DNA of 63,719 bases, from NCBI GenBank assembly GCA_943704425.1, contig CALSCP010001613.1, positions 1 to 63,719 of the forward strand. The letters are read 5' to 3'. Position numbers and translations under genes: made by a program. Positions 361-24,885 of the stretch are shown here, piece after piece; position 1 is the stretch's first letter, and each line of letters begins with the position of its first letter. The notes under the pieces were generated by a model. That model saw nothing but the letters and a program-made list of their open reading frames with translations. It was not told the DNA's origin and searched no databases. The stretch comes from Ministeria vibrans ATCC 50519 (lineage: Eukaryota; Protista; Filasterea).

Positions 361-2526
361 ATGACCGATCGCGAAACATTCCTTTCCACCTTCAAGCGCC
401 TGGCCACCGAGCTTGTGGACGATGCCAAATCGCAGTATGAGATGCCTGAAGACGCGACGGACTGGTTGAAATTGGTACGTTGCCATGTTTTCCACCTCTC
501 TCGCGCGCCCGGGCTTGTTGCCGCTAGCCGTTGGTGTTGTTTGCTTATGTGATTGGGGATGAGCGCGTCTACAAGTACGCGGCGGCCCCCATTTGACGGC
601 GATGCGTTGTTTGGCCTTGGTCGATTTTCATTCGCTGTCAGTGTCGGATGAGGACGGATTTTGCCACAGAGCCAACGCAGTCACTGTCGTTTCGCTACAC
701 TCCCCCCTATCGCCCAAGTGTTCAATAGCGCGTGTGATGGACGTGCAGGCGGCACGCCTTACGTGCGATCAAAGCACTCATGTCTGATTCGTTTTTTTCT
801 TCTTTGCTTTTGTCTTCAGGTTCTTGACTACAACGTTCCCGGTGGTACGAGTCCAACGCGTCTTGGATCGGTGTGGTGTGTGTGATTTGCTGAGGTTTGG
901 TGCACTGTGTGTAGGTAAAATGAATCGAGGTCTCAGTGTGGTGGATGCGTATCAGACGATTCGCGGAGACAGCGTCACTCTGAGCGCCGATGAGCTGTTC
1001 AAGGCGCAGGTTCTCGGGTGGTGCGTGGAGTGGGTAAGAGGAGCGTGTTGATGAGATACGCTGCGGTGCAAGTGCACAGCCAACGAGTGACATTGAACCT
1101 CAACTTCCGTAGCTTCAAGCGTATTTTCTTGTGGCCGACGACATTATGGACTCGTCCATCACGCGGCGGGGACAGCCGTGCTGGTACAAGAGAGTAAGTT
1201 TGTGCTTTCTGCGTGGTGTGTGTGTCATTGTGGTGTGTATGTGCGTCTTTGTGGTGTCATGTGTGATTGTGGTGTGTGTGTGTGTGTCATTGTGGTGTGT
1301 GTGTCTCTGTGGTGTGTGTGTCTTTGTTTTGTGTGTGTCTCTGTGGTGTGTGTGTCTCTGTGGTGTGTGTGTCATTGTGGTGTGTGTGTCTCTGTGGTGT
1401 GTGTGTCTTTGTGGTGTCATGTGTCATTGTGGTGTGTGTGTGTGTGTCTTTGTTTTGTGTGTGTCTCTGTGGTGTGTGTGTCTTTGTGCTGTGTGTGTCT
1501 TTGTGGTGTGTCTTCGTGGTGTGTGTTTACTCACAGCATCACTTGCAGGAAGACGTGGGTATGGTTGCGGTGAACGATTCGCTTCTGATTGAGGGAAGTA
1601 TGTACATGGTGTTGCGCAAGCACTTCAAGGGAACGCCCTATTACACGGACATCCTCGACTTGTTTCACGAGGTATGTGTCTCTATGCAGTGTCGTACCCA
1701 GCAGAAAAAGGCAAAGCGATTTTTTTTTGAAAATTATCACTGCTGCTTGATGATGTAGGTGTCGTATCAGACTGAGCTTGGGCAGCTTCTTGACCTACTG
1801 ACTGCGCCCGAGGGCAAGGTTGATCTCAACCGATTCTCCATTGAGCGCCACTCGAAGATTGTTCGCTACAAGACTGCTTTTTACTCGTTCTACATGCCAG
1901 TTGCACTTGCGCTTATTTTGGTATGCGGGCCTTTGTGCATGAGGGAGAGTGTACTGACTGTTGTTCTTAGGCGGGAATCAAAGAGCAGACGGCCTTCGAT
2001 GAAAGCAAAGAGATTTTGTTAGAGATGGGCGAGTTCTTTCAGATCCAGGTGAGAACCTGGTCTTACAGGGGAAAGTGTATGGACTGACAAGTGATTTTAC
2101 TTGTATTGCAGGATGACTACCTGGACTGCTATGGCGATCCAAAGGTGATTGGGAAGATTGGGACGGACATTGAGGACAATAAGTGCGGGTGGCTGATTGT
2201 GCAGGCGCTTAAGCGAGCATCAGACAGCCAGCGCAGCGAACTGCACGTAAGGAGTCGCGCCAAGGGGGAGGGGGCGGTGTTTGTTTGCGCAGTAACTCAC
2301 CTCATCGTATTGTGTATGTGTGCAGGCCAATTACGCGCGGGCGGATCCAGTGTGTGTGGCGGCTGTCAAAGCAGTGTACAAAGATCTCAACCTGGAACAG
2401 CTGTACAAGGACACCGAGACGGAGAGCTACGCGCGCCTCACGGCCATGATCGAATCCAAGTGCGAGTATGTGCCCAAAAAGGTGTTTCTCGATTTTGCCA
2501 AGAAGATCTACTTCCGACACAAGTGA
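361..2526 (+). CDS. FDPS: Farnesyl diphosphate synthase (multi-exon)
   Basis: Spliced model gives [23 protein letters not shown] (FARM with aromatic chain-length residues), [19 protein letters not shown] and FQIQDDYLD (SARM), ending KIYFRHK*. GT-AG introns include 475-819, 845-914 and 1034-1112. Confidence 0.97.
1210..1525. repeat. TG-rich intronic minisatellite (tgtgtctctgtggtgtg-like units)
   Basis: Imperfect tandem TG-rich units inside an FPPS intron; they explain the Cys/Val-rich spurious ORFs. Confidence 0.9.
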
Positions 2527-17013: not shown

Positions 17014-19544
17014 ATGTCTTACCCGGGCGAGGGCGCACGCCTTCGAACGAACACCTTGAACAAGGAAGAGGACGTGAACAGCGCGTCGTCGGCGGCCGAA
17101 GTCAAAGCGAAATCAACTGGTAAACAAGAAAAAAAAGAGAAGAAAAAAAAAAAGAGGAAAAAAAAAAAAAAAAGAAAAAAAACAAAGGCAGGCGCATGCG
17201 TATGGTGTTCACACTGGCCCGGTCATTATGAAACTCTGCTCCTCGCCGCTGGCCCTGCGTCGCTGTTGCAATCGGTTGACGAAAACCATTTCAAACACAA
17301 TCCTGGCAACGGCCCACCATCGCTCATGCGCACCCCTGCCTCCACCCAGGCCCTTGCCTTTCTCAACCAGTCTCCTTCGTCGCACCCTTTTGAATGTCTT
17401 CGTTTGTTTTCCGGCCAAAAGAGGCAAAAAAAAAAACCTGTGACGCCACGCCTTAGCGACGGCGCCTCCATTGGCCGGCCTCCCCGTGGAATAAATACCC
17501 GCCTCGTCTGCTTGTGATCTTGCCACCCCTACTTCCCTCAAACCCAACCTGTCTTTCTGTTTCTCTTCGTGCTGATGTGGGCCCGGCCAGAAACGGTAAA
17601 ACCTGGAATGGGTGGGTTGGCGCTTGATGCTCTTTTTCTCTCTCTATCACTTTTTTTTTTCTATTGTATTGTTCTCTCCTTTTTCGAAATAATCTCCAAT
17701 CCGCCGTCTCGCGCGTTTCCGTGCCTCCCTGGCGTTCGAACGAGCGCATGTGCCGCGCCACATCTATGGACTCATCGTATAGCCACGTCGGCGATGCCGT
17801 TGCCCTTGCTTTAGGGTGTTTCTTGCCTGTGTTTCGATGCCGACCATTTTTTTTTCTTCTTTTTGACCTTTGTTTCGACTTGTGATTGCAGCCAAGGGGA
17901 AGATTACAACAGTAGTGGCCACGGGAAAGAACGGGCGAAGCCACGAGCTGAGCTATGCGGACGCGAGGGTGATTGGCAATGGGTCGTTTGGCGTTGTCTT
18001 CCAGGCGCGTCTGGTGCTCACCAACGAAGTGGTTGCCATCAAGAAGGTTCTGCAGGACAAGCGCTTCAAGGTGCCCTTTTTTCCCACCCCACAATATCTT
18101 CCCTATCACCCTTCTCTTACACATACTTCACTTTGTTATTTCCTCTCGCTTTTTTTTCTTCTTTCCTCTTTTTTTTTTTTTTCGCAGAACCGTGAGCTGC
18201 AAATCATGCGTCTCCTGGCTCACACCAACGTCGTGGAGCTCAAGCATTACTTCTATTCCAACGGCGAGAAGGTATGATGTGACGACCCTGTGTGTGTCGT
18301 GGTGCTAACTCGTGTGTGTTGCGTTACTTGGGACACACAGAAGGATGAGGTGTATCTTAATCTTGTGCTGGACTACGTTCCAGAGACAGTCTACCGTGTC
18401 GCAAGACATTACAGCAAGCTCAAGCAAACTATCCCAATGCTTCTTGTCAAGGTCTGCATTTGCTTTTATTTCTTCTACTTCTCTTTCTTCCATCTCTCTA
18501 TCACGTTTCTTTCTCCCGCTTCTTTCTCCCTCTTCTCTTATTACTTATCTCACCAATATCCTATCCTTCTTCGCAGTTGTATATGTATCAAGTGTTCCGA
18601 TCGCTCGCATACATTCACTCACTGGGCATTTGCCATCGCGACATCAAACCTCAAAATCTCCTCCTCGATCCCACATTGGGCATCGTCAAACTCTGTGACT
18701 TTGGAAGGTATAGGCACAACAACACAATCATGACATTTTTGTCACGACGCTAATCCTTTTTGGTATTCTTGTTGCACTGCAGCGCAAAGAAGCTGGTCAA
18801 AGGGGAACCTAACGTCGCGTACATCTGCTCGCGCTACTACCGCGCACCTGAACTTATTTTTGGCGCCACAGACTACTCTCCTTCCATTGGTACCCGCTCA
18901 TGTTACACTTCCCCTCTCCCCTCTCAATTTTTTCTTTTTGTGTTGCTCCTGTTGCTCGGTAGACATCTGGTCTGCAGGCTGTGTCATGGCAGAGCTGATG
19001 TTGGGCCACCCAATGTTCCCGGGTGAGAGTGGCATTGAGCAGCTGGTGGAGATCATTAAAGTTCTCGGCACTCCCACACGCGAGGAAATCCAGTCGATGA
19101 ACGCAAACTACAACGACTTCAAGTTTCCCCAGATCAAGGCGCATCCCTGGAACGAAATCTTCCGCTCCAAGACATCGCCCGAGGCGACCTCCTTCATTGC
19201 CCTCCTCCTCGAGTACACGCCGGCAAAGCGAGTGTCTGCCTGGGACTCGCTTGCGCACTCTTTCTTTGACGAACTCCGTCTCCCCACCACCAAACTCATC
19301 AACGGCGCTCCTCTCCCCGTCCTCTTCGATTTCACCCCCGAAGGTCCGTCGTGTCACACTCCATCCACGTACACTTCCTTCACTCACAGTTTGTCTTGTC
19401 TTTCCTTGTTGTCGCACTGTAGAGCTGCAAATCAACCCGTCCATCAACGACAAGCTCATCCCTGAACACGCAAAGACCGCAGCGGCAGCAGACGTATCCG
19501 CAGCGTCGTCGACACAACCCTCCGCCGACCCTGCTACAACATAA
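17014..19544 (+). CDS. GSK3: Glycogen synthase kinase 3
   Basis: [61 protein letters not shown] and FPQIKAHPW. Exon 1 (17014-17119) joins 17892 in phase 1. Confidence 0.97.
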
Positions 19545-19781
19545 TCCCGTCCCATCACTTGCACCCCCATGTCTCTTATTTCTCTCTGTCCTCTTTTCCT
19601 TTCGGTCTCCATTGAACTCTACACACTTTGGAACTTTGCCACATTTCTTCTTTCTTTTTCTTCCTCTTTCTTTTCTTTCTTTCTTTCTCCCTCTTTTTTT
19701 TTTTTTTTTTTTTTTGGGCGGTAGGGTGGGACTTGACGTGTTAAGGGTGTAATAGTGTGTATGAATATTGTGAACAATGAC

Positions 19782-20072
19782 CTATGACGATGGGGGCTGC
19801 TGGGGCGGTTGGGGCTGATGGGGCTGTCGCGGAGGAGCAAACTGAGGACGAGGCCCAAAGTAGCTCTGCTGGAAGGACGGCGTCAACGCATAGTTGTATG
19901 GGGAAGGGGCCATACCACGAGGCGCCATCATAGCCGGGGCAAAGAACCCACCAGAGGCAGACGCGATCGTTGGCCTAGGCGCAGTAGGACTTCCTCGCAT
20001 CGCCTCAACTGGCCCACTGACAACGGCAGTGCCAGTGCTGCCCGATTGCCCACCGCCAGCTTGCTTGTGCAC

Positions 20073-20119
<47 letters not shown>

Positions 20120-23100
20120 GAGAAGGAGGTCGCATCATGAGCATCTGGGGAGAAACGTACTGGCCCATCGGAAGTGGGTGACCCGGCGCCTGTCCTGGCA
20201 GCTGCTGCATTTGCTGATGAGGGGTTTGTGGATTGAACATAAACGACTGCATCGGCGACGACCCCACCGGATGCGGAGCGGGCCACATCATATGTCTCAT
20301 TGCTGGATGTTGCATTGGCATCCCAAACATGAAAGGCGCCGCACCCAGCATGGGTGTCGCTCCCAAGGGTGCTTGCATCGGCGCCCTGACTGCCCCAGGC
20401 GGCGCAAGGACGGGTGCGCCCGCACGTATGGGAGCGGTGGTCGTCACTACTGTCGTGCTATCTGATGTTGTGGTTGGTGTTGCGATTGTCGGTGGCGCGA
20501 CGGCGGGGGTGGATACAACAGGCGCGGGCACTGGTGGCGACGGCCCTTTCCAGACAAACGACGGTTCCGTCTTGCTCGGTTGCCAGTCGTTCGTCTCGTC
20601 GACCTCCATCGATGCCCTCTGTGCCTTCTTCCCCTCATCCCCTTCTCCCTTTGCTTTCTCACCGTTGCCATCACTGCTCGACTGCTCCCTTGTCTTTGAT
20701 GCATCATTCCTCTCCACAGGCGTTGCAACAGTCGACACGTCCTGCCCCTGCGAATCCTGGGTCCTATCCATAGCCGTTGCCGTGTCCGTCTCGCCCGACG
20801 CATTTTCATTCTGCTTTGGGTACGCGGCTGCTATTGCAGGCGCAACACTGGCGGGGGGGACGGGTGTACAACCAACAGACAGCGCTGGACCAGCAGCGAC
20901 TGGGGCGATTCCTACAACGGGCGCGCCGGTGTACGGCCTGGGCAGCGGCATGCCTCCCATGCTGTTGTAGCTATTCTGGTAGAGCAGAGAGAGCTCGTTT
21001 GCTTGTTGCTGCTGCAGGTAGAGCAACTCAAGCTCCTGCTGCTGACTCAGGCACAACCGTCGATATTCCATCATTTGGCTCAGCTGCAGATTGTACGCTT
21101 GGTTTGCTGTAGAGCGCGCGGCCGCCGACGACGGAGGTTCAATGACGGGCACAGGCAACCGTGGAACCTTTCGTGGGTGCAAGGGCGGATCAAATGCCTC
21201 GGGAATGCCAGGCACGGAGGGTGGCAGCGACCGTTTGCGGGACTCGCCCGCAGTCGACGCGCGCTCGTCCGCATCGTCATCGGCGTCGACGTTGGGCGCG
21301 CCTCTCAACGACGGGGTGCTGTCGACGTCACGGGGCGACATTGGCGAGGTTACATCGGCAGGTGGTGGGCGCTGGTAATCGACAGACGAGAGCGCGGGAT
21401 GGGCTGAGGCGCGACCTCGTCCGCGCGGGCGTCCGCGCCGACGCGGTACTGCCAGTGCTGCCATACTACTCCCGGCACCCCGTCCACGGCCACGTGTGCT
21501 TCCACGAGGGCGCCCGCGTGGTCGGCCGCGTGGTTGGCCACGTGTCGCTGTCACTGGTGGTGGTTGGTAGATGGGAATTCCTACCCCGTCGTCCTCGTCG
21601 CTCTCACCACTGCAATACCACAGATCGCCTTCCCTCACATACTCTCCTTGTGCCCACATGCTTGCCTCGTTGTGTCGTCGACGCCCCATGCCCCCTTTCC
21701 CTGCAATGCCAGCAGCAGCGGCGGTGGCCGCAGCCGCCGCCGCCGCAGCAGCAACAACACCTTTCTGTCGCGGTGACGAAAACACGGCTACCCCTTCGTG
21801 CACAGGAAAGCCATCAATCACATCGATCTCATGGGTGACATTCTCCGCCTGCGAACTTGTGTCCTCACCAACAGCAGCAGCAGTGGTGATGGAGTCGAGC
21901 GGCGATGTTGTTGTTGTTGTTTTTGTTGTTGTTGTTGACGTTGACGCTGTCGTTGCTGGCGCAGGTGGCCCCGGATTCGTTGATGTCGTCCTTTGCTCTG
22001 TTCTCTCTTCCTCTTCTTCGTCATCCGTTTCTTCTTCTTCCTCGTCCTCCCCCTTTTGTTCTTCTACACCACTCCCTTCGATCTCCTTCTTCTTCTCCTC
22101 CTCCCCATCATCGTCACCACCACCACCACCAGTGGCAGATCCTTCTCCACCTCCTTCGCCAAGTTGCGCACTGTCTCCTGCAGCTACCTCACCACCATTG
22201 TTATCATCGCCACTTCCGTTTCCCTCTCCACTATTCTTCCTCGGTTTCTCCTCGTCACCCTTGGAACTCGTCCACCCTTCATCGTTCGTTCCAACCCTAC
22301 TCCTCATCACCTGCCTTGCTCGCTCGCGACAGCGCCACAGACGCTCCAGCTCCTCATCAACACCCCTATCGTCGTCGTTGCTGTCCTCGTCGCTCTCCTG
22401 GTAGTCCTCGTCGACGTCTTCCCTTGCGCTGTAGTCTTTGTCGACGTGAGCCTTGCGAGCTCGTGTGGTGCCGAGCCTCGCTGCATACCCGCGCCTCTCC
22501 TCCTCCTCCTTCTCTTCTTCCCCTTGGCCGTATTTCCCACCACCAATACGGCTGTGGCAGTACAGCTGTGTGTGTTTGCGCCGAATCCGTGCTTGCGCGG
22601 AGTCATTGTGTTCGTCCGTGTCTGACGTCCTACTCGCATCTCCACCGGTGCTGCTCTTGCCGTCGCTGCGCCGCCCGCCCACCACTAGCCCACCAACAAA
22701 CGCCTGAGCGGCCAGACTGTAGGCAACGGCGCCGCCGCGCAGGCGACCGCCCCCTCTGGCAGACGCCGAGAGCGCCCTCTTCTGTTCGGCTGTCATGGGA
22801 AAACGGTACGACACCAGCTTGAGGAATGCATTTTCGCCTTCGCCGCGCACCACCAGCTTGGTGAGGCCGTGGCGGACGAACACGTCGCGCGTCGCATTGT
22901 CGGCGCGTGTCACTTCCTGATATTTGGCAATATTCTTCAAGTGCCAATAATTTTGCGCGTTCCATCGTCGGCCGTCGCGCCACCGACGCAGCCGTGACGT
23001 GTCGATCACATAAGTTTGATTTCCTTTCACCTGAAGAGACGGCGGCAATGAGAAGGGCGAGTGTGAATACGTTTATTAGGGTCTATCTTATCTAACACGA

Positions 23101-23536
23101 GAAAAAAAAAAAAGAAGCGACAGTCCAAAAAATAAAAATTATAGCGTCGAGAAGGATTGGCGGGATCTTTCACGATGAACAAAGGAAATGTAATGCACGG
23201 CCCGAAGCAGGCGAACGAGAAGCAGCAGCAGCAGAGCTCGCAAACAACCGATTGTTTTATTCCTGTTTTTTTTTTTTTTTTTTTTTTTTTTTTCGTGCGG
23301 TAGAGCGGAAACCGCTTTTAATCTTGGCGTACGCGATGAAAGTCGCTTTTGGACAAGCGCGTGCGGGTCACGGGCAGCACGCCGGTGTGGCACATGTGGA
23401 GAATGGTGCTGACGTCTGCGTCGGAGTCAATCGCGCCATCCAGACACCCCACTTGTTCACCGCCCTCGCCCGCCACGCACATGACACGCGCATGCAACAA
23501 GCTAGTGAACCCGTTCGAGTCCACGTCAAACGGCAT
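19782..23536 (-). CDS. WOPR (Gti1/Pac2)-like DNA-binding protein with AT-hooks and Q/P-rich tail (about 1150 aa)
   Basis: Exon 1 (23536-23333) joins exon 2 (23030-19782) in phase 0, giving LDGAIDSDADVSTILHMCHTGVLPVTRTRLSKSDFHR|VKGNQTYVIDTSRLRRWRDGRRW...KYQEV...FVRHGLTKLVVR...LKLVSY, colinear with the WOPR consensus. Also PRGRPR and RRRGRPR AT-hooks and poly-Q. Confidence 0.75.
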
Positions 23537-23895
23537 ACGCGCGGATCAGAATCGCTACGCGACACAGGTACGTAAAGATATGTTTTTTTTCACTTTTCAA
23601 TAATAATGATTATAAATTATTTTGTGATGAGAAATTAATTCTTCATAATAGTTTTATGTATGAACGAATGAGAAATAATTATTAAATAATTATAAGCCTA
23701 GTATCGAAATGTATCGATTATCAATGAATTCACTATTAACTATTGTCGCCCGACGACTAATGAGAAATAATAAAAATAAAAAGTTGCATAAAATAAACAA
23801 ACACAAAACTCTCACTCTACTCCTCCTCGCTCTCTCTCTCACTTTGCTTCTTTCTCCCTCCTCATTTCGCTCTCTCTCCTTCTCTTGACCATGTT

Positions 23896-24885
23896 TTATC
23901 CAAGCGACCCCAACTCGGTTTTGGCCGAAAGGAAATCCAAGAGACCTTCAGTGTCCTCGTCGAAAGTCTCGACAATACTGTCTGCGACAAGCGCCTTGGT
24001 GAAGTGGATGATGAGGTCGCGCTGTGACGTTTCGTTCGCATCGAGCACCGCCATTTTAATGGTGGAGAGTGCCATGGGGCGAGCGGTGGTCTTGACGTGG
24101 TCGGAGACGTCCACGGGCGTAAGGCTAGCCTGACGCAGCGTCTCAGTCGACACTGTACCGCGCACCTTGTCCAGCTTGTTCATGTAGCAGAAAAACATTC
24201 GCTCCTTGTTGGCCGGATCGTCCAGTAGTGCTTGCCAAGTCTCGAGACCTTCTTTGAGCGACTCGGGCCTTTCGTACATGTCGCCTACCGGCAGAATGTA
24301 GATAATGGCAGTTGCATGAACACTCATCCCCAGAGTCACCTCTGCTCGCTTCAGTTTCACCGTGCGCAGCCCCCGAGCGCCTCTGGCCTCAGCAGTATGC
24401 AGGACACGTGCCAGCGCGTAGCCCACAACTTCTTCGGGCACCACATACGACTCATCGGCGGCAACGAGCGCGCCGATGGTAAACAACAGAGGCGACGGAC
24501 GGACCATCGGGTCTTCAACCGCCCCGATCAGGCTCGCTACGTTTGTCGCACACGCCTGCAGTGCACTCCTGCATGCGTCCACACTGTCGGGCGCGACCCC
24601 CTCCAGTGCCGTCCTGATCTGTGCGGCGTCGTCGATCGCCGCAAGCGTTGGGTTCGATGCAAATGCCAAGGCAGCCTCGCGACACTCGAAATAGAGTGCA
24701 TCGCGGATCGCCGCCGCAGTGAACACCGCGTCATTGTCGACGCCCATGGCAAGCTGCGCGAAAATGGTTGTCGCGCCGCTGTTGTGTGCGCCGATGATCG
24801 AGAAATGCGGTCTCACTTCGATCGAGCCCTCGGCGGTTCTGCAATCGGCTGGTGTCTTTGGCGAGCCACGCATCATATTCCCCAT
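23896..24885 (-). CDS. Highly divergent heterotrimeric G-protein alpha-like protein (probable pseudo-GTPase)
   Basis: Single exon, 329 aa. MG N-terminus; IIGAHNSGATTIFAQL (G1), helical-domain-length spacer, LARVLHT (switch I), ATAIIYILPVGD, CYMNKLD (G4) and IIHFTKAL...IVETFD (G5). No DxxGQ. Confidence 0.75.
   Translation of the reverse strand: MGNMMRGSPKTPADCRTAEGSIEVRPHFSIIGAHNSGATTIFAQLAMGVDNDAVFTAAAIRDALYFECREAALAFASNPTLAAIDDAAQIRTALEGVAPDSVDACRSALQACATNVASLIGAVEDPMVRPSPLLFTIGALVAADESYVVPEEVVGYALARVLHTAEARGARGLRTVKLKRAEVTLGMSVHATAIIYILPVGDMYERPESLKEGLETWQALLDDPANKERMFFCYMNKLDKVRGTVSTETLRQASLTPVDVSDHVKTTARPMALSTIKMAVLDANETSQRDLIIHFTKALVADSIVETFDEDTEGLLDFLSAKTELGSLG

What the first reader, a model, noticed from the sequence alone, without database searches (positions are those of the whole stretch)
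19782..23536. WOPR (Wor1/Pac2/Gti1/Ryp1)-like transcription factor in an apparently non-fungal genome
Seen in sequence: the domain appears only after joining a 68-codon exon (23536-23333, cgc|gtacgc) to the large ORF at 23030 (ttcag|gtg). The result reads G-A-I-D-S-D-A-D-V-x-x-I-L-H-M-C-H-T-G-V-L-P...R-L...V-K-G-N-Q-T-Y-V-I...R-R-W-R-D-G-x-x-W...Y-Q-E...F-V-R-H-G-L-T-K-L-V-V...L-V-S-Y. Established: this is colinear with the WOPR consensus (G.V.TT.DAL.LFEAC..G.L...RR...IRSG.VF...KRWTDG..WSPSR...YRE...F...GL.KKT.S...HLVSYY), master regulators of fungal morphological switching described as fungal-specific. Differences here are that the phospho-Thr of KRWTDG is Arg, the SPSR recognition loop is replaced by NAQNYW, the a/b linker is only about 12 aa, and AT-hooks plus a Q/P-rich tail are added. 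Inference: neighbours such as IQSEC, CRELD and CD36 point to a holozoan, so WOPR would be an ancestral opisthokont switch regulator (or a transfer) with altered DNA specificity.
Basis: partly seen in the sequence, partly recalled or inferred. Interest (0 to 1): 0.85.

Follow-up and report, generated by a model that had tools for sequence, protein, structure and literature searches.

The report
Divergent WOPR regulator gene in a holozoan
This is a real, expressed two-exon gene for a divergent WOPR (Gti1/Pac2) DNA-binding regulator in a single-celled relative of animals; the family is known mainly from fungi, its presence in such protists was reported in 2023, and what is new here is an altered DNA-reading loop and added AT-hooks.

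Summary
The gene lies on the minus strand: exon 1 at 23536-23333, a 302-nt GT..AG intron at 23332-23031, and exon 2 at 23030-19782. Contigs of two RNA-like public runs carry exactly this junction; a DNA-like run does not.

Neither exon alone reaches Pfam Gti1_Pac2. An exhaustive phmmer search with the start of exon 2 found three real relatives: one labelled Corallochytrium and two from one unidentified eukaryote. Two of them pass the Pfam threshold (38.8 bits); the third falls just short (21.8). A profile of exon 2 plus relatives hits only YHR177W and Wor1 among all PDB sequences (E 5e-10, 2.5e-8). The two exons match adjacent parts of a homologue profile, with no gap at the junction.

The genome has integrin-beta and Runt genes, so it is holozoan and not fungal. 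Earlier scan notes call it Ministeria vibrans. It holds four more WOPR loci, which this scan had already noted on other pieces.

The host inference is right but not new: Merenyi et al. 2023 reported Gti1/Pac2 in holozoans. What is new is a small subfamily with a conserved, longer loop (WN-x-x-x-[YQ]-WH) in place of WSPSR, Arg in place of the PKA-site Thr, and three AT-hook cores. Altered DNA specificity is inferred, not tested.

The parts
23537..23787 (-). 5' untranslated region (extent approximate)
   Evidence: RNA-like contigs of X1 and X2 run unbroken from 23331 to 23787 and 23760. In-frame stops lie 3 and 6 codons upstream of the ATG.
23333..23536 (-). Exon 1, 68 codons. Residues 30-68 are the first strand and helix of WOPRa (G-x-I-D-S..D...I L..C..G.LP....RL).
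   Evidence: hhalign against the homologue alignment A1: E 0.0038, query 32-67 onto columns 5-40. Ranks 1st of 1605 window pieces with the N-terminal-only HMM (E 0.072) and 2nd, behind exon 2, with the full HMM (E 0.009).
23031..23332 (-). Intron, 302 nt, GTACGC...TCTTCAG, phase 0, containing a long A-run
   Evidence: Junction that skips exactly these bases in contigs of X1 (depth 117) and X2 (52). Absent from the DNA-like run X13. Zero depth in the intron bin 23103-23263 of X5. Intron-containing contigs also exist in X1 and X2.
19782..23030 (-). Exon 2, 1082 codons plus TAG
   Evidence: Open frame. RNA-like contigs lie over most of it, broken at simple repeats.
22914..23030 (-). Rest of WOPRa (VKGNQTYVID..RRWRDGRRW..KYQE)
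   Evidence: hhalign against A1: probability 99.2, E 1.2e-19. phmmer hits P0002-P0004. Profile A3 against PDB hits only YHR177W and Wor1.
22971..22988 (-). RRWRDG, the counterpart of the fungal KRWTDG PKA-site motif, with Arg in place of Thr
   Evidence: Sequence. Role of the motif in fungi from PMC13729134. The homologues carry T, T and N at this position.
22941..22964 (-). WNAQNYWH, the altered loop in place of fungal WSPSR(I/L)xG; two residues longer, with no Arg at the SPSR position
   Evidence: HMM alignment to 4m8b_R and 4qtj_A. The same loop type occurs in P0002, P0003 and P0004.
22800..22880 (-). WOPRb (FVRHGLTKLVVRG....FLKLVSYRF)
   Evidence: Aligned to the GL.KK...L.SYY region of YHR177W and Wor1. 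The AF2 model of exon 2 alone gives three strands here at pLDDT 70-79.
21831..22430 (-). Acidic, low-complexity block (net charge about -38 over 200 aa)
   Evidence: Composition.
21426..21530 (-). Arg/Gly-rich segment with three RGRP AT-hook cores (21519-21530, 21507-21518, 21426-21437)
   Evidence: Regular-expression scan of the exon 2 translation. Pfam AT_hook was not reported.
19785..20330 (-). Q/P/M-rich C-terminal tail, including poly-Q16 at 20073-20120
   Evidence: Composition.

Best explanation
The locus is an intact, transcribed, two-exon gene for a nuclear protein of about 1150 aa. Its N-terminus is a divergent WOPR (Gti1/Pac2) domain.

The gene belongs to a small non-fungal subfamily, so far seen in this holozoan, in a protein labelled Corallochytrium, and in one unidentified eukaryote. 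The subfamily keeps the WOPR core: the helix plus interdigitated sheet, RW-DG--W, Y-E, GL-K and L-L-V-SY. It replaces the fungal WSPSR minor-groove loop with a longer WN-x-x-x-[YQ]-WH loop.

Inferred mechanism: the WOPRa and WOPRb halves fold into one sheet that docks on DNA as in Wor1 and YHR177W. The re-made loop, which lacks the inserted Arg, would read a different site. Three AT-hooks would add minor-groove affinity for AT-rich DNA. The acidic block and the Q/P-rich tail would recruit the transcription machinery. The PKA-type switch of fungal WOPRs is absent in this copy.

Shown: gene structure, splicing, homology, and the holozoan nature of the host. Inferred: DNA binding, changed specificity, activation.
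For: - Gene and splice.
- Exhaustive phmmer: the first 90 aa of exon 2, searched against 1.84 billion proteins, gave only three real hits (E 1e-9 to 1e-7). Two pass Pfam PF09729 at 38.8 bits against a cut-off of 23.6; the third reaches 21.8.
- hhalign: exon 2 against the homologue alignment has E 1.2e-19; exon 1 has E 0.0038 on the columns directly before it.
- Window-wide ranking: the two exons are the two best of 1605 six-frame pieces.
- PDB: the A3 profile hits only YHR177W (E 5.1e-10) and Wor1 (E 2.5e-8, spanning both WOPRa and WOPRb).
- Own genome: the only non-self six-frame hit of exon 2 (E 0.018) falls on one of the four PF09729 loci.
- Structure by proxy: the AF2 model of the Corallochytrium homologue has WOPR structures as its top four Foldseek hits (probability 0.99-1.0), then a gap to E 0.19.
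- ESM Atlas: all 30 feature hits are Gti1_Pac2 clusters.
- Core motif: DxxxW, which stabilises the recognition loop (PMC9252788), is kept as D-G-R-R-W.
- Host: integrin-beta and Runt are present.
- Prior report of holozoan WOPRs.
Against: - Neither exon reaches Pfam Gti1_Pac2 even at E<=10. The six-frame PF09729 scan of the genome misses this locus.
- The joined protein was not scored or folded.
- Exon 1 support is weak on its own: E 0.004-0.07, and BLASTP against P0003 found nothing.
- Both AF2 models are low-confidence (pLDDT 57 and 58.5). The exon-2-only model gave no structural match.
- The junction contigs bridge by only 28-30 letters, and the runs are only guessed to be RNA.
- The loop Arg that makes the key fungal DNA contact is missing, so DNA binding itself is not assured.
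- The fungal motif TTAAAGTTT is not enriched in the window: 14 matches against 10.2 expected.
Confidence: 0.8

Rival explanations
1. The WOPR fold is kept but sequence-specific DNA reading is lost. The domain would act as a protein-interaction or chromatin module, as proposed for the structurally related Ssr4 N-terminal domain. DNA contact would come only from the AT-hooks.
Against: The new loop is itself conserved across three organisms, which suggests a selected function at the DNA-facing position. The first 100 aa of exon 2 are strongly basic (net +13). DxxxW and the sheet residues are kept. The PDB profile search hits only the DNA-binding WOPRs, and Ssr4 appears only at probability 0.04 in Foldseek.
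Confidence: 0.14
2. The gene reached this protist by recent horizontal transfer from a fungus.
For: The family is overwhelmingly fungal.
Against: - The gene has a host-type intron with the same GTACGCC donor as a paralogue.
- The genome has at least five diverged WOPR genes.
- The nearest relatives are non-fungal or unlabelled, not fungal.
- In an unrooted tree the gene groups with the Corallochytrium-labelled and SRR33270664 proteins rather than with its own paralogues. Support is 94/93, falling to 71/85 without the loop columns.
- Merenyi 2023 reports the family in several holozoans.
Confidence: 0.03
3. The resemblance is chance and the protein is an unrelated low-complexity nuclear protein.
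For: No Pfam hit exon by exon. Most of the protein is low-complexity.
Against: E 1.2e-19 to a profile of Pfam-positive homologues. Only WOPR chains are hit in PDB. Exon 1 continues the match colinearly.
Confidence: 0.02

Closest known systems
Fungal WOPR regulators with solved structures: S. cerevisiae YHR177W (PDB 4m8b) and C. albicans Wor1 (4qtj, 4qtk)
   Same: N-terminal two-part domain (WOPRa plus WOPRb) with the RW-DG--W, Y-E, GL-K and L-SY motifs. A long disordered Q-rich C-terminus. These are the only PDB sequence hits of the subfamily profile and the top Foldseek hits of the homologue model.
   Different: The loop WSPSR(I/L)xG becomes WNAQNYWH, two residues longer and without the Arg. 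The PKA-site Thr is Arg. The linker is only about 15 aa, against up to about 130 aa in Wor1. AT-hooks and an acidic block are added. The host is a holozoan.
Clim_evm91s147 (EukProt label for Corallochytrium limacisporum; P0004) and two proteins from run SRR33270664 (P0002, P0003)
   Same: Same subfamily: RRW-D-R-WN-x-x-x-[YQ]-WH-x-N loop, short linker, and the same length across the exon junction. Identity over the exon 2 part is 35-51%.
   Different: They are uninterrupted in the called genes. They are 130, 574 and 398 aa long, and none contains an RGRP AT-hook core as printed. Two keep the Thr of RRWTD. Two pass the Pfam threshold whereas the window's exons apart do not.
Holozoan Gti1/Pac2 representatives reported by Merenyi et al. 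2023 (Capsaspora, Salpingoeca, Corallochytrium; PMC10406608), and the four other WOPR loci of this genome (C1768, C2330, C1986, C2426)
   Same: WOPR genes in unicellular relatives of animals, with short linkers and non-SPSR loops.
   Different: Those paralogues are detectable by Pfam and carry other loop types (WSKSYSTKAGW, WxDxVHPxGG). The window's gene is Pfam-silent exon by exon and groups with the Corallochytrium-type subfamily.
Other families of the same fold group: CG-1 (CAMTA), SWI/SNF Ssr4 N-terminal domain, NAM/NAC
   Same: Helix plus five-strand sheet; DxxxW stabilises the loop in WOPR and CG-1.
   Different: No Pfam or PDB sequence hit to any of them. Ssr4 and NAC appear in Foldseek only at probability 0.04-0.08.

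Membership tests
Gti1/Pac2 (WOPR), Pfam PF09729 | Score at or above the Pfam gathering threshold (23.6 bits) | tested here: inconclusive
Exon 1, the start of exon 2 and the whole of exon 2 give no hit at E<=10, and the six-frame genome scan misses the locus. The nearest homologues P0003 and P0004 score 38.8 bits and P0002 scores 21.8.
Gti1/Pac2 (WOPR), Pfam PF09729 | Two conserved regions (WOPRa about 80 aa, WOPRb about 50 aa), colinear and joined by a variable linker | tested here: met
   hhalign E 1.2e-19 over both regions. The A3 profile aligns to YHR177W 9-153 and Wor1 5-237. Exon 1 supplies the start of WOPRa.
Gti1/Pac2 (WOPR), Pfam PF09729 | RW-DG--W core with the DxxxW motif that stabilises the recognition loop | tested here: met
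   R-R-W-R-D-G-R-R-W at 22962-22988. Role of the motif from PMC9252788.
Gti1/Pac2 (WOPR), Pfam PF09729 | PKA-type phospho-acceptor Thr in KRWTDG | tested here: not met
   Arg at that position. The motif is described in PMC13729134. The position varies within the subfamily (T, T, N).
Gti1/Pac2 (WOPR), Pfam PF09729 | Conserved WSPSR loop whose Arg enters the minor groove | tested here: not met
   WNAQNYWH, two residues longer. The SPSR Arg aligns to an aromatic or Ser position. Role of the Arg. That the inserted Arg is the one in SPSR rests on my memory, because the structure papers are not held.
Gti1/Pac2 (WOPR), Pfam PF09729 | WOPR fold (helix plus interdigitated beta-sheet) | tested here: inconclusive
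   The model of the homologue P0004 (pLDDT 57, pTM 0.52) has 4m8b, 4qtk and 4qtj as its top four Foldseek hits, TM about 0.47. The model of the window's exon 2 alone is a half-domain and gave no match. The joined protein was not folded.
Gti1/Pac2 (WOPR), Pfam PF09729 | Sequence-specific binding to a TTAAAGTTT-type site | not testable with these tools
   Only a motif count was possible: 14 matches with up to one mismatch against 10.2 expected, and none upstream of the gene.
AT-hook | R-G-R-P core flanked by basic residues | tested here: met
   Three cores (PRGRPRG, PRGRPRG, RRGRPRG) at exon 2 residues 501, 505 and 532. Pfam AT_hook was not listed.
CG-1 / Ssr4_N / NAM (same fold group) | Sequence or profile match to those families | tested here: not met
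   No Pfam hit. The PDB profile search returns WOPR chains only.

The most novel reading that the evidence does not exclude
The window's gene represents an old, holozoan-side WOPR subfamily. It is shared by a filasterean and a protein labelled Corallochytrium, and is Pfam-silent in this copy. The arginine-bearing minor-groove loop was rebuilt into a conserved aromatic WN-x-x-x-[YQ]-WH loop, which would give a DNA-recognition mode and target site unlike those of any characterised WOPR. In Ministeria it is combined with AT-hooks. This would be a second solution for DNA reading on the WOPR scaffold, lost on the way to animals.
Probability: 0.4. Interest if true: 0.55.

Novelty: new variant of a known kind. 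Interest (0 to 1): 0.4.

Why it matters
WOPR proteins are master switches of cell type and virulence in fungi and are still widely described as fungal-specific.

This gene adds a fifth, Pfam-invisible WOPR to a close unicellular relative of animals. Domain-based censuses of transcription factors in animal relatives therefore under-count the family.

The conserved replacement of the DNA-reading loop is a natural experiment on how this unusual DNA-binding fold sets its specificity, and it can be tested directly with protein-binding arrays.

The finding does not change the broader evolutionary picture. Ancestry of the family in the common ancestor of animals and fungi was already proposed in 2023.

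Tried and rejected
- Pfam on each exon apart: no Gti1_Pac2 hit.
- Six-frame PF09729 scan of the genome: four other loci, not this one.
- Word-indexed protein searches with exon 2 residues 1-110, P0003 residues 40-175 and the C1768 paralogue's domain found nothing or only the query itself. No fungal sequences could therefore be fetched, and no rooted tree was made.
- BLASTP of exon 1 against P0003 found nothing. The profile methods did find a match.
- P0001, the top phmmer hit, is a repeat-rich protein with no WOPR hit in Pfam and five scattered matched stretches. I discarded it as spurious.
- The AF2 model of the window's exon 2 alone is low-confidence, and Foldseek gave nothing meaningful.
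- The Wor1 motif TTAAAGTTT is not enriched in the window and is absent upstream of the gene.
- The two WOPR-DNA structure papers (PMC4152732, PMC4115540) are not held, so residue-level DNA contacts come second-hand.
- All searches were done exon by exon.
Full report
**1. What is in the sequence.**

On the minus strand, ATG 23536 opens a 68-codon frame that ends CGC|GTACGC at 23333/23332. In-frame stops lie 3 and 6 codons upstream of the ATG. A 302-nt stretch follows and ends TCTTCAG|GTG at 23031/23030. From 23030 a frame stays open for 1082 codons to TAG at 19784-19782.

**2. Is the intron real?**

I laid contigs of four public runs on 19400-24200.

- Two RNA-like runs of one 2025 study, X1 and X2, each hold a contig with a joint that skips 302 bases. 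At cut +2 its ends are CT..AC on the + strand, which is exactly 23031-23332 and reads GT..AG on the gene's strand.
- The DNA-like run X13 covers most of the intron (23031-23254) at even depth and has no such joint. No contig was laid across the intron's A-run at 23255-23303.
- A 2011 run from another study, X5, has zero depth in the intron bin. Its contigs stop at 23059 and start at 23331.
- X1 and X2 also hold intron-containing contigs, so unspliced RNA or some DNA is present too.

Two caveats apply. The bridging side is 28 letters plus 2 ambiguous letters. That is what a k=31 unitig gives at a spliced/unspliced bubble, but it is under the tool's 31-letter rule. The runs are also only guessed to be RNA.

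The contigs run unbroken upstream to about 23760-23787, so no further 5' exon is needed.

**3. Is it a WOPR domain?**

Tested exon by exon, Pfam gives no Gti1_Pac2 hit. The six-frame PF09729 scan of the whole 29.7-Mb assembly finds four other loci but not this one. The answer came from relatives.

- An exhaustive phmmer search with the first 90 residues of exon 2 against 1.84 billion representative proteins gave four hits.
- One hit, P0001, is a repeat-rich protein with no WOPR hit in Pfam and is spurious.
- The other three are P0002, P0003 and P0004. They share the unusual string RRW-x-D-x-R-x-W-N-[SA]-x-x-[YQ]-W-H with the window.
- In Pfam, P0003 and P0004 score 38.8 bits on Gti1_Pac2 (cut-off 23.6). 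P0002 scores 21.8.
- P0004 carries the EukProt name Clim_evm91s147, the label used for Corallochytrium limacisporum.
- P0002 and P0003 come from one Logan assembly, SRR33270664. They sit on eukaryote-type contigs with EAP30, PH and RhoGEF neighbours.

I aligned these three with an own-genome paralogue whose WOPR lies in one exon (alignment A1). Against A1:

- Exon 2 aligns with hhalign probability 99.2 and E 1.2e-19, onto columns 44-160.
- Exon 1 aligns with E 0.0038, residues 32-67 onto columns 5-40.

An HMM of A1 run against all 1605 six-frame pieces of the window ranks exon 2 first (70.5 bits, E 1.1e-20, HMM 42-121). It ranks exon 1 second (12.6 bits, E 0.009, HMM 4-46). With the N-terminal columns alone, exon 1 is still rank 1 (E 0.072).

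In the multiple alignment the window's two pieces meet without a gap. K-S-D-F-H-R | V-K-G-N-Q-T-Y-V-I-D has the same length as K-A-Q-R-S-R-I-G-P-N-Q-M-Y-I-F-D in P0003.

Further support:

- A profile of exon 2 plus six relatives (A3) hits only two of 177,635 distinct PDB sequences. These are YHR177W (E 5.1e-10) and Wor1 (E 2.5e-8), and both WOPRa and WOPRb are covered.
- Inside the window's own genome, the only non-self hit of exon 2 (E 0.018) falls on one of the four PF09729 loci.

The structural evidence is supportive but weak.

- The AlphaFold model of P0004 has pLDDT 57 and pTM 0.52. Its secondary-structure order is two helices followed by six strands.
- Its top four Foldseek hits are the WOPR structures 4m8b, 4qtk_B, 4qtj and 4qtk_A (probability 0.99-1.0, TM about 0.47). 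The next hit is at E 0.19.
- All 30 ESM-Atlas feature hits are Gti1_Pac2 clusters.
- The model of the window's exon 2 alone folds only its WOPRb half and finds nothing.

**4. Host.**

The assembly has three integrin-beta loci (183-224 bits) and Runt (113 bits). It has only two weak Zn2Cys6 hits. Neighbouring genes include Sec7, a Vps34-type PI3K, JmjC/PHD and a NOX-type reductase. This is a holozoan-type genome, not a fungal one.

Earlier notes of this scan name it Ministeria vibrans. I did not verify the species name itself, because run and organism names are coded.

**5. How it differs from fungal WOPRs.**

- The Thr of the KRWTDG PKA motif is Arg here.
- The WSPSR loop is replaced by WNAQNYWH. 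Papers held here describe an Arg of that fungal loop as making the key minor-groove contact. In the HMM alignment the new loop is two residues longer, with no Arg at the SPSR position.
- The DxxxW motif that braces the loop is kept.
- The a/b linker is about 15 aa.
- Downstream lie an acidic block (net charge about -38), three RGRP AT-hook cores, poly-Q16 and a Q/P/M-rich tail.

The new loop is conserved in all three relatives, but the Thr-to-Arg change is not (T, T, N). None of the three relatives contains an RGRP core as printed.

An unrooted ML tree of the seven available sequences separates the window, P0002, P0003 and P0004 from three own-genome paralogues. Support is 94/93, falling to 71/85 when the loop columns are removed. 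This suggests a real subfamily but does not prove it.

**6. Most likely mechanism.**

By homology this is a nuclear DNA-binding regulator. The two WOPR halves form one sheet on DNA. The rebuilt loop presumably reads a different site than TTAAAGTTT. The AT-hooks add AT-rich minor-groove affinity, and the acidic and Q/P-rich parts act in activation.

Only the homology, the gene structure and the splicing are shown. The rest is inference.

The main rival is that the fold is kept but specific DNA reading is lost, as suggested for the related Ssr4 N-domain. The fungal motif is not enriched in the window.

**7. Novelty.**

The premise that WOPR is fungal-specific is out of date. Merenyi et al. [quoted passage not shown] Only that paper and its preprint mention Pac2 together with Corallochytrium in the library searched.

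This scan had already noted four other WOPR loci on other pieces of the same genome, and one follow-up reached the same conclusion.

What remains new is a fifth paralogue that domain scans miss. It belongs to a small subfamily with a conserved alternative recognition loop, here fused to AT-hooks. I rate it a new variant of a known kind, of moderate interest.

Noticed in passing
window 21712-21744: A contig of the 2011 run X5 skips 33 bases (11 codons, in frame) inside the poly-Ala tract of exon 2. The other runs do not. The ends are not GT..AG, so this looks like a length allele or strain difference and not an intron.
   Followed up: no
L006 (G000:C1986) about 1705-2221, minus strand: The WOPR paralogue on contig C1986 is also split inside WOPRa by a phase-0 intron with the same donor, GTACGCC. 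That intron lies 5 codons further downstream than the window's (IRPGD|CFIFD against FHR|VKGNQTYVID). The positions are therefore not shared.
   Followed up: partly
L001 (G000:C1768) 1720-2094, minus strand: This paralogue carries a complete WOPR domain in one exon at the C-terminal end of an open frame of at least 600 aa, after long poly-Q runs. This is the reverse of the usual N-terminal position. Directly downstream lies a tandem repeat that reads EFKRESSRERVQER-like units in all three frames.
   Followed up: no
G000: C1768, C2330, C1986, C2426 and the window: The five WOPR genes of this genome carry at least three different versions of the DNA-facing loop (WSKSYSTKAGW, W-x-D-x-VHP-x-GG, WNAQNYWH). 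None is the fungal WSPSR.
   Followed up: partly
window 23896-24885, minus strand: The intronless 329-aa ORF directly upstream of the WOPR gene has no Pfam hit at E<=1e-5.
   Followed up: no
window 23255-23303 and 19700-19726: Long A-runs lie inside the intron and just after the stop codon. Contigs of all runs break there.
   Followed up: no
window 23830-23863: A CT-rich simple repeat between the two genes shows very high summed depth in X13 (about 19,000 against about 170). This points to a repeat that is common in the genome.
   Followed up: no
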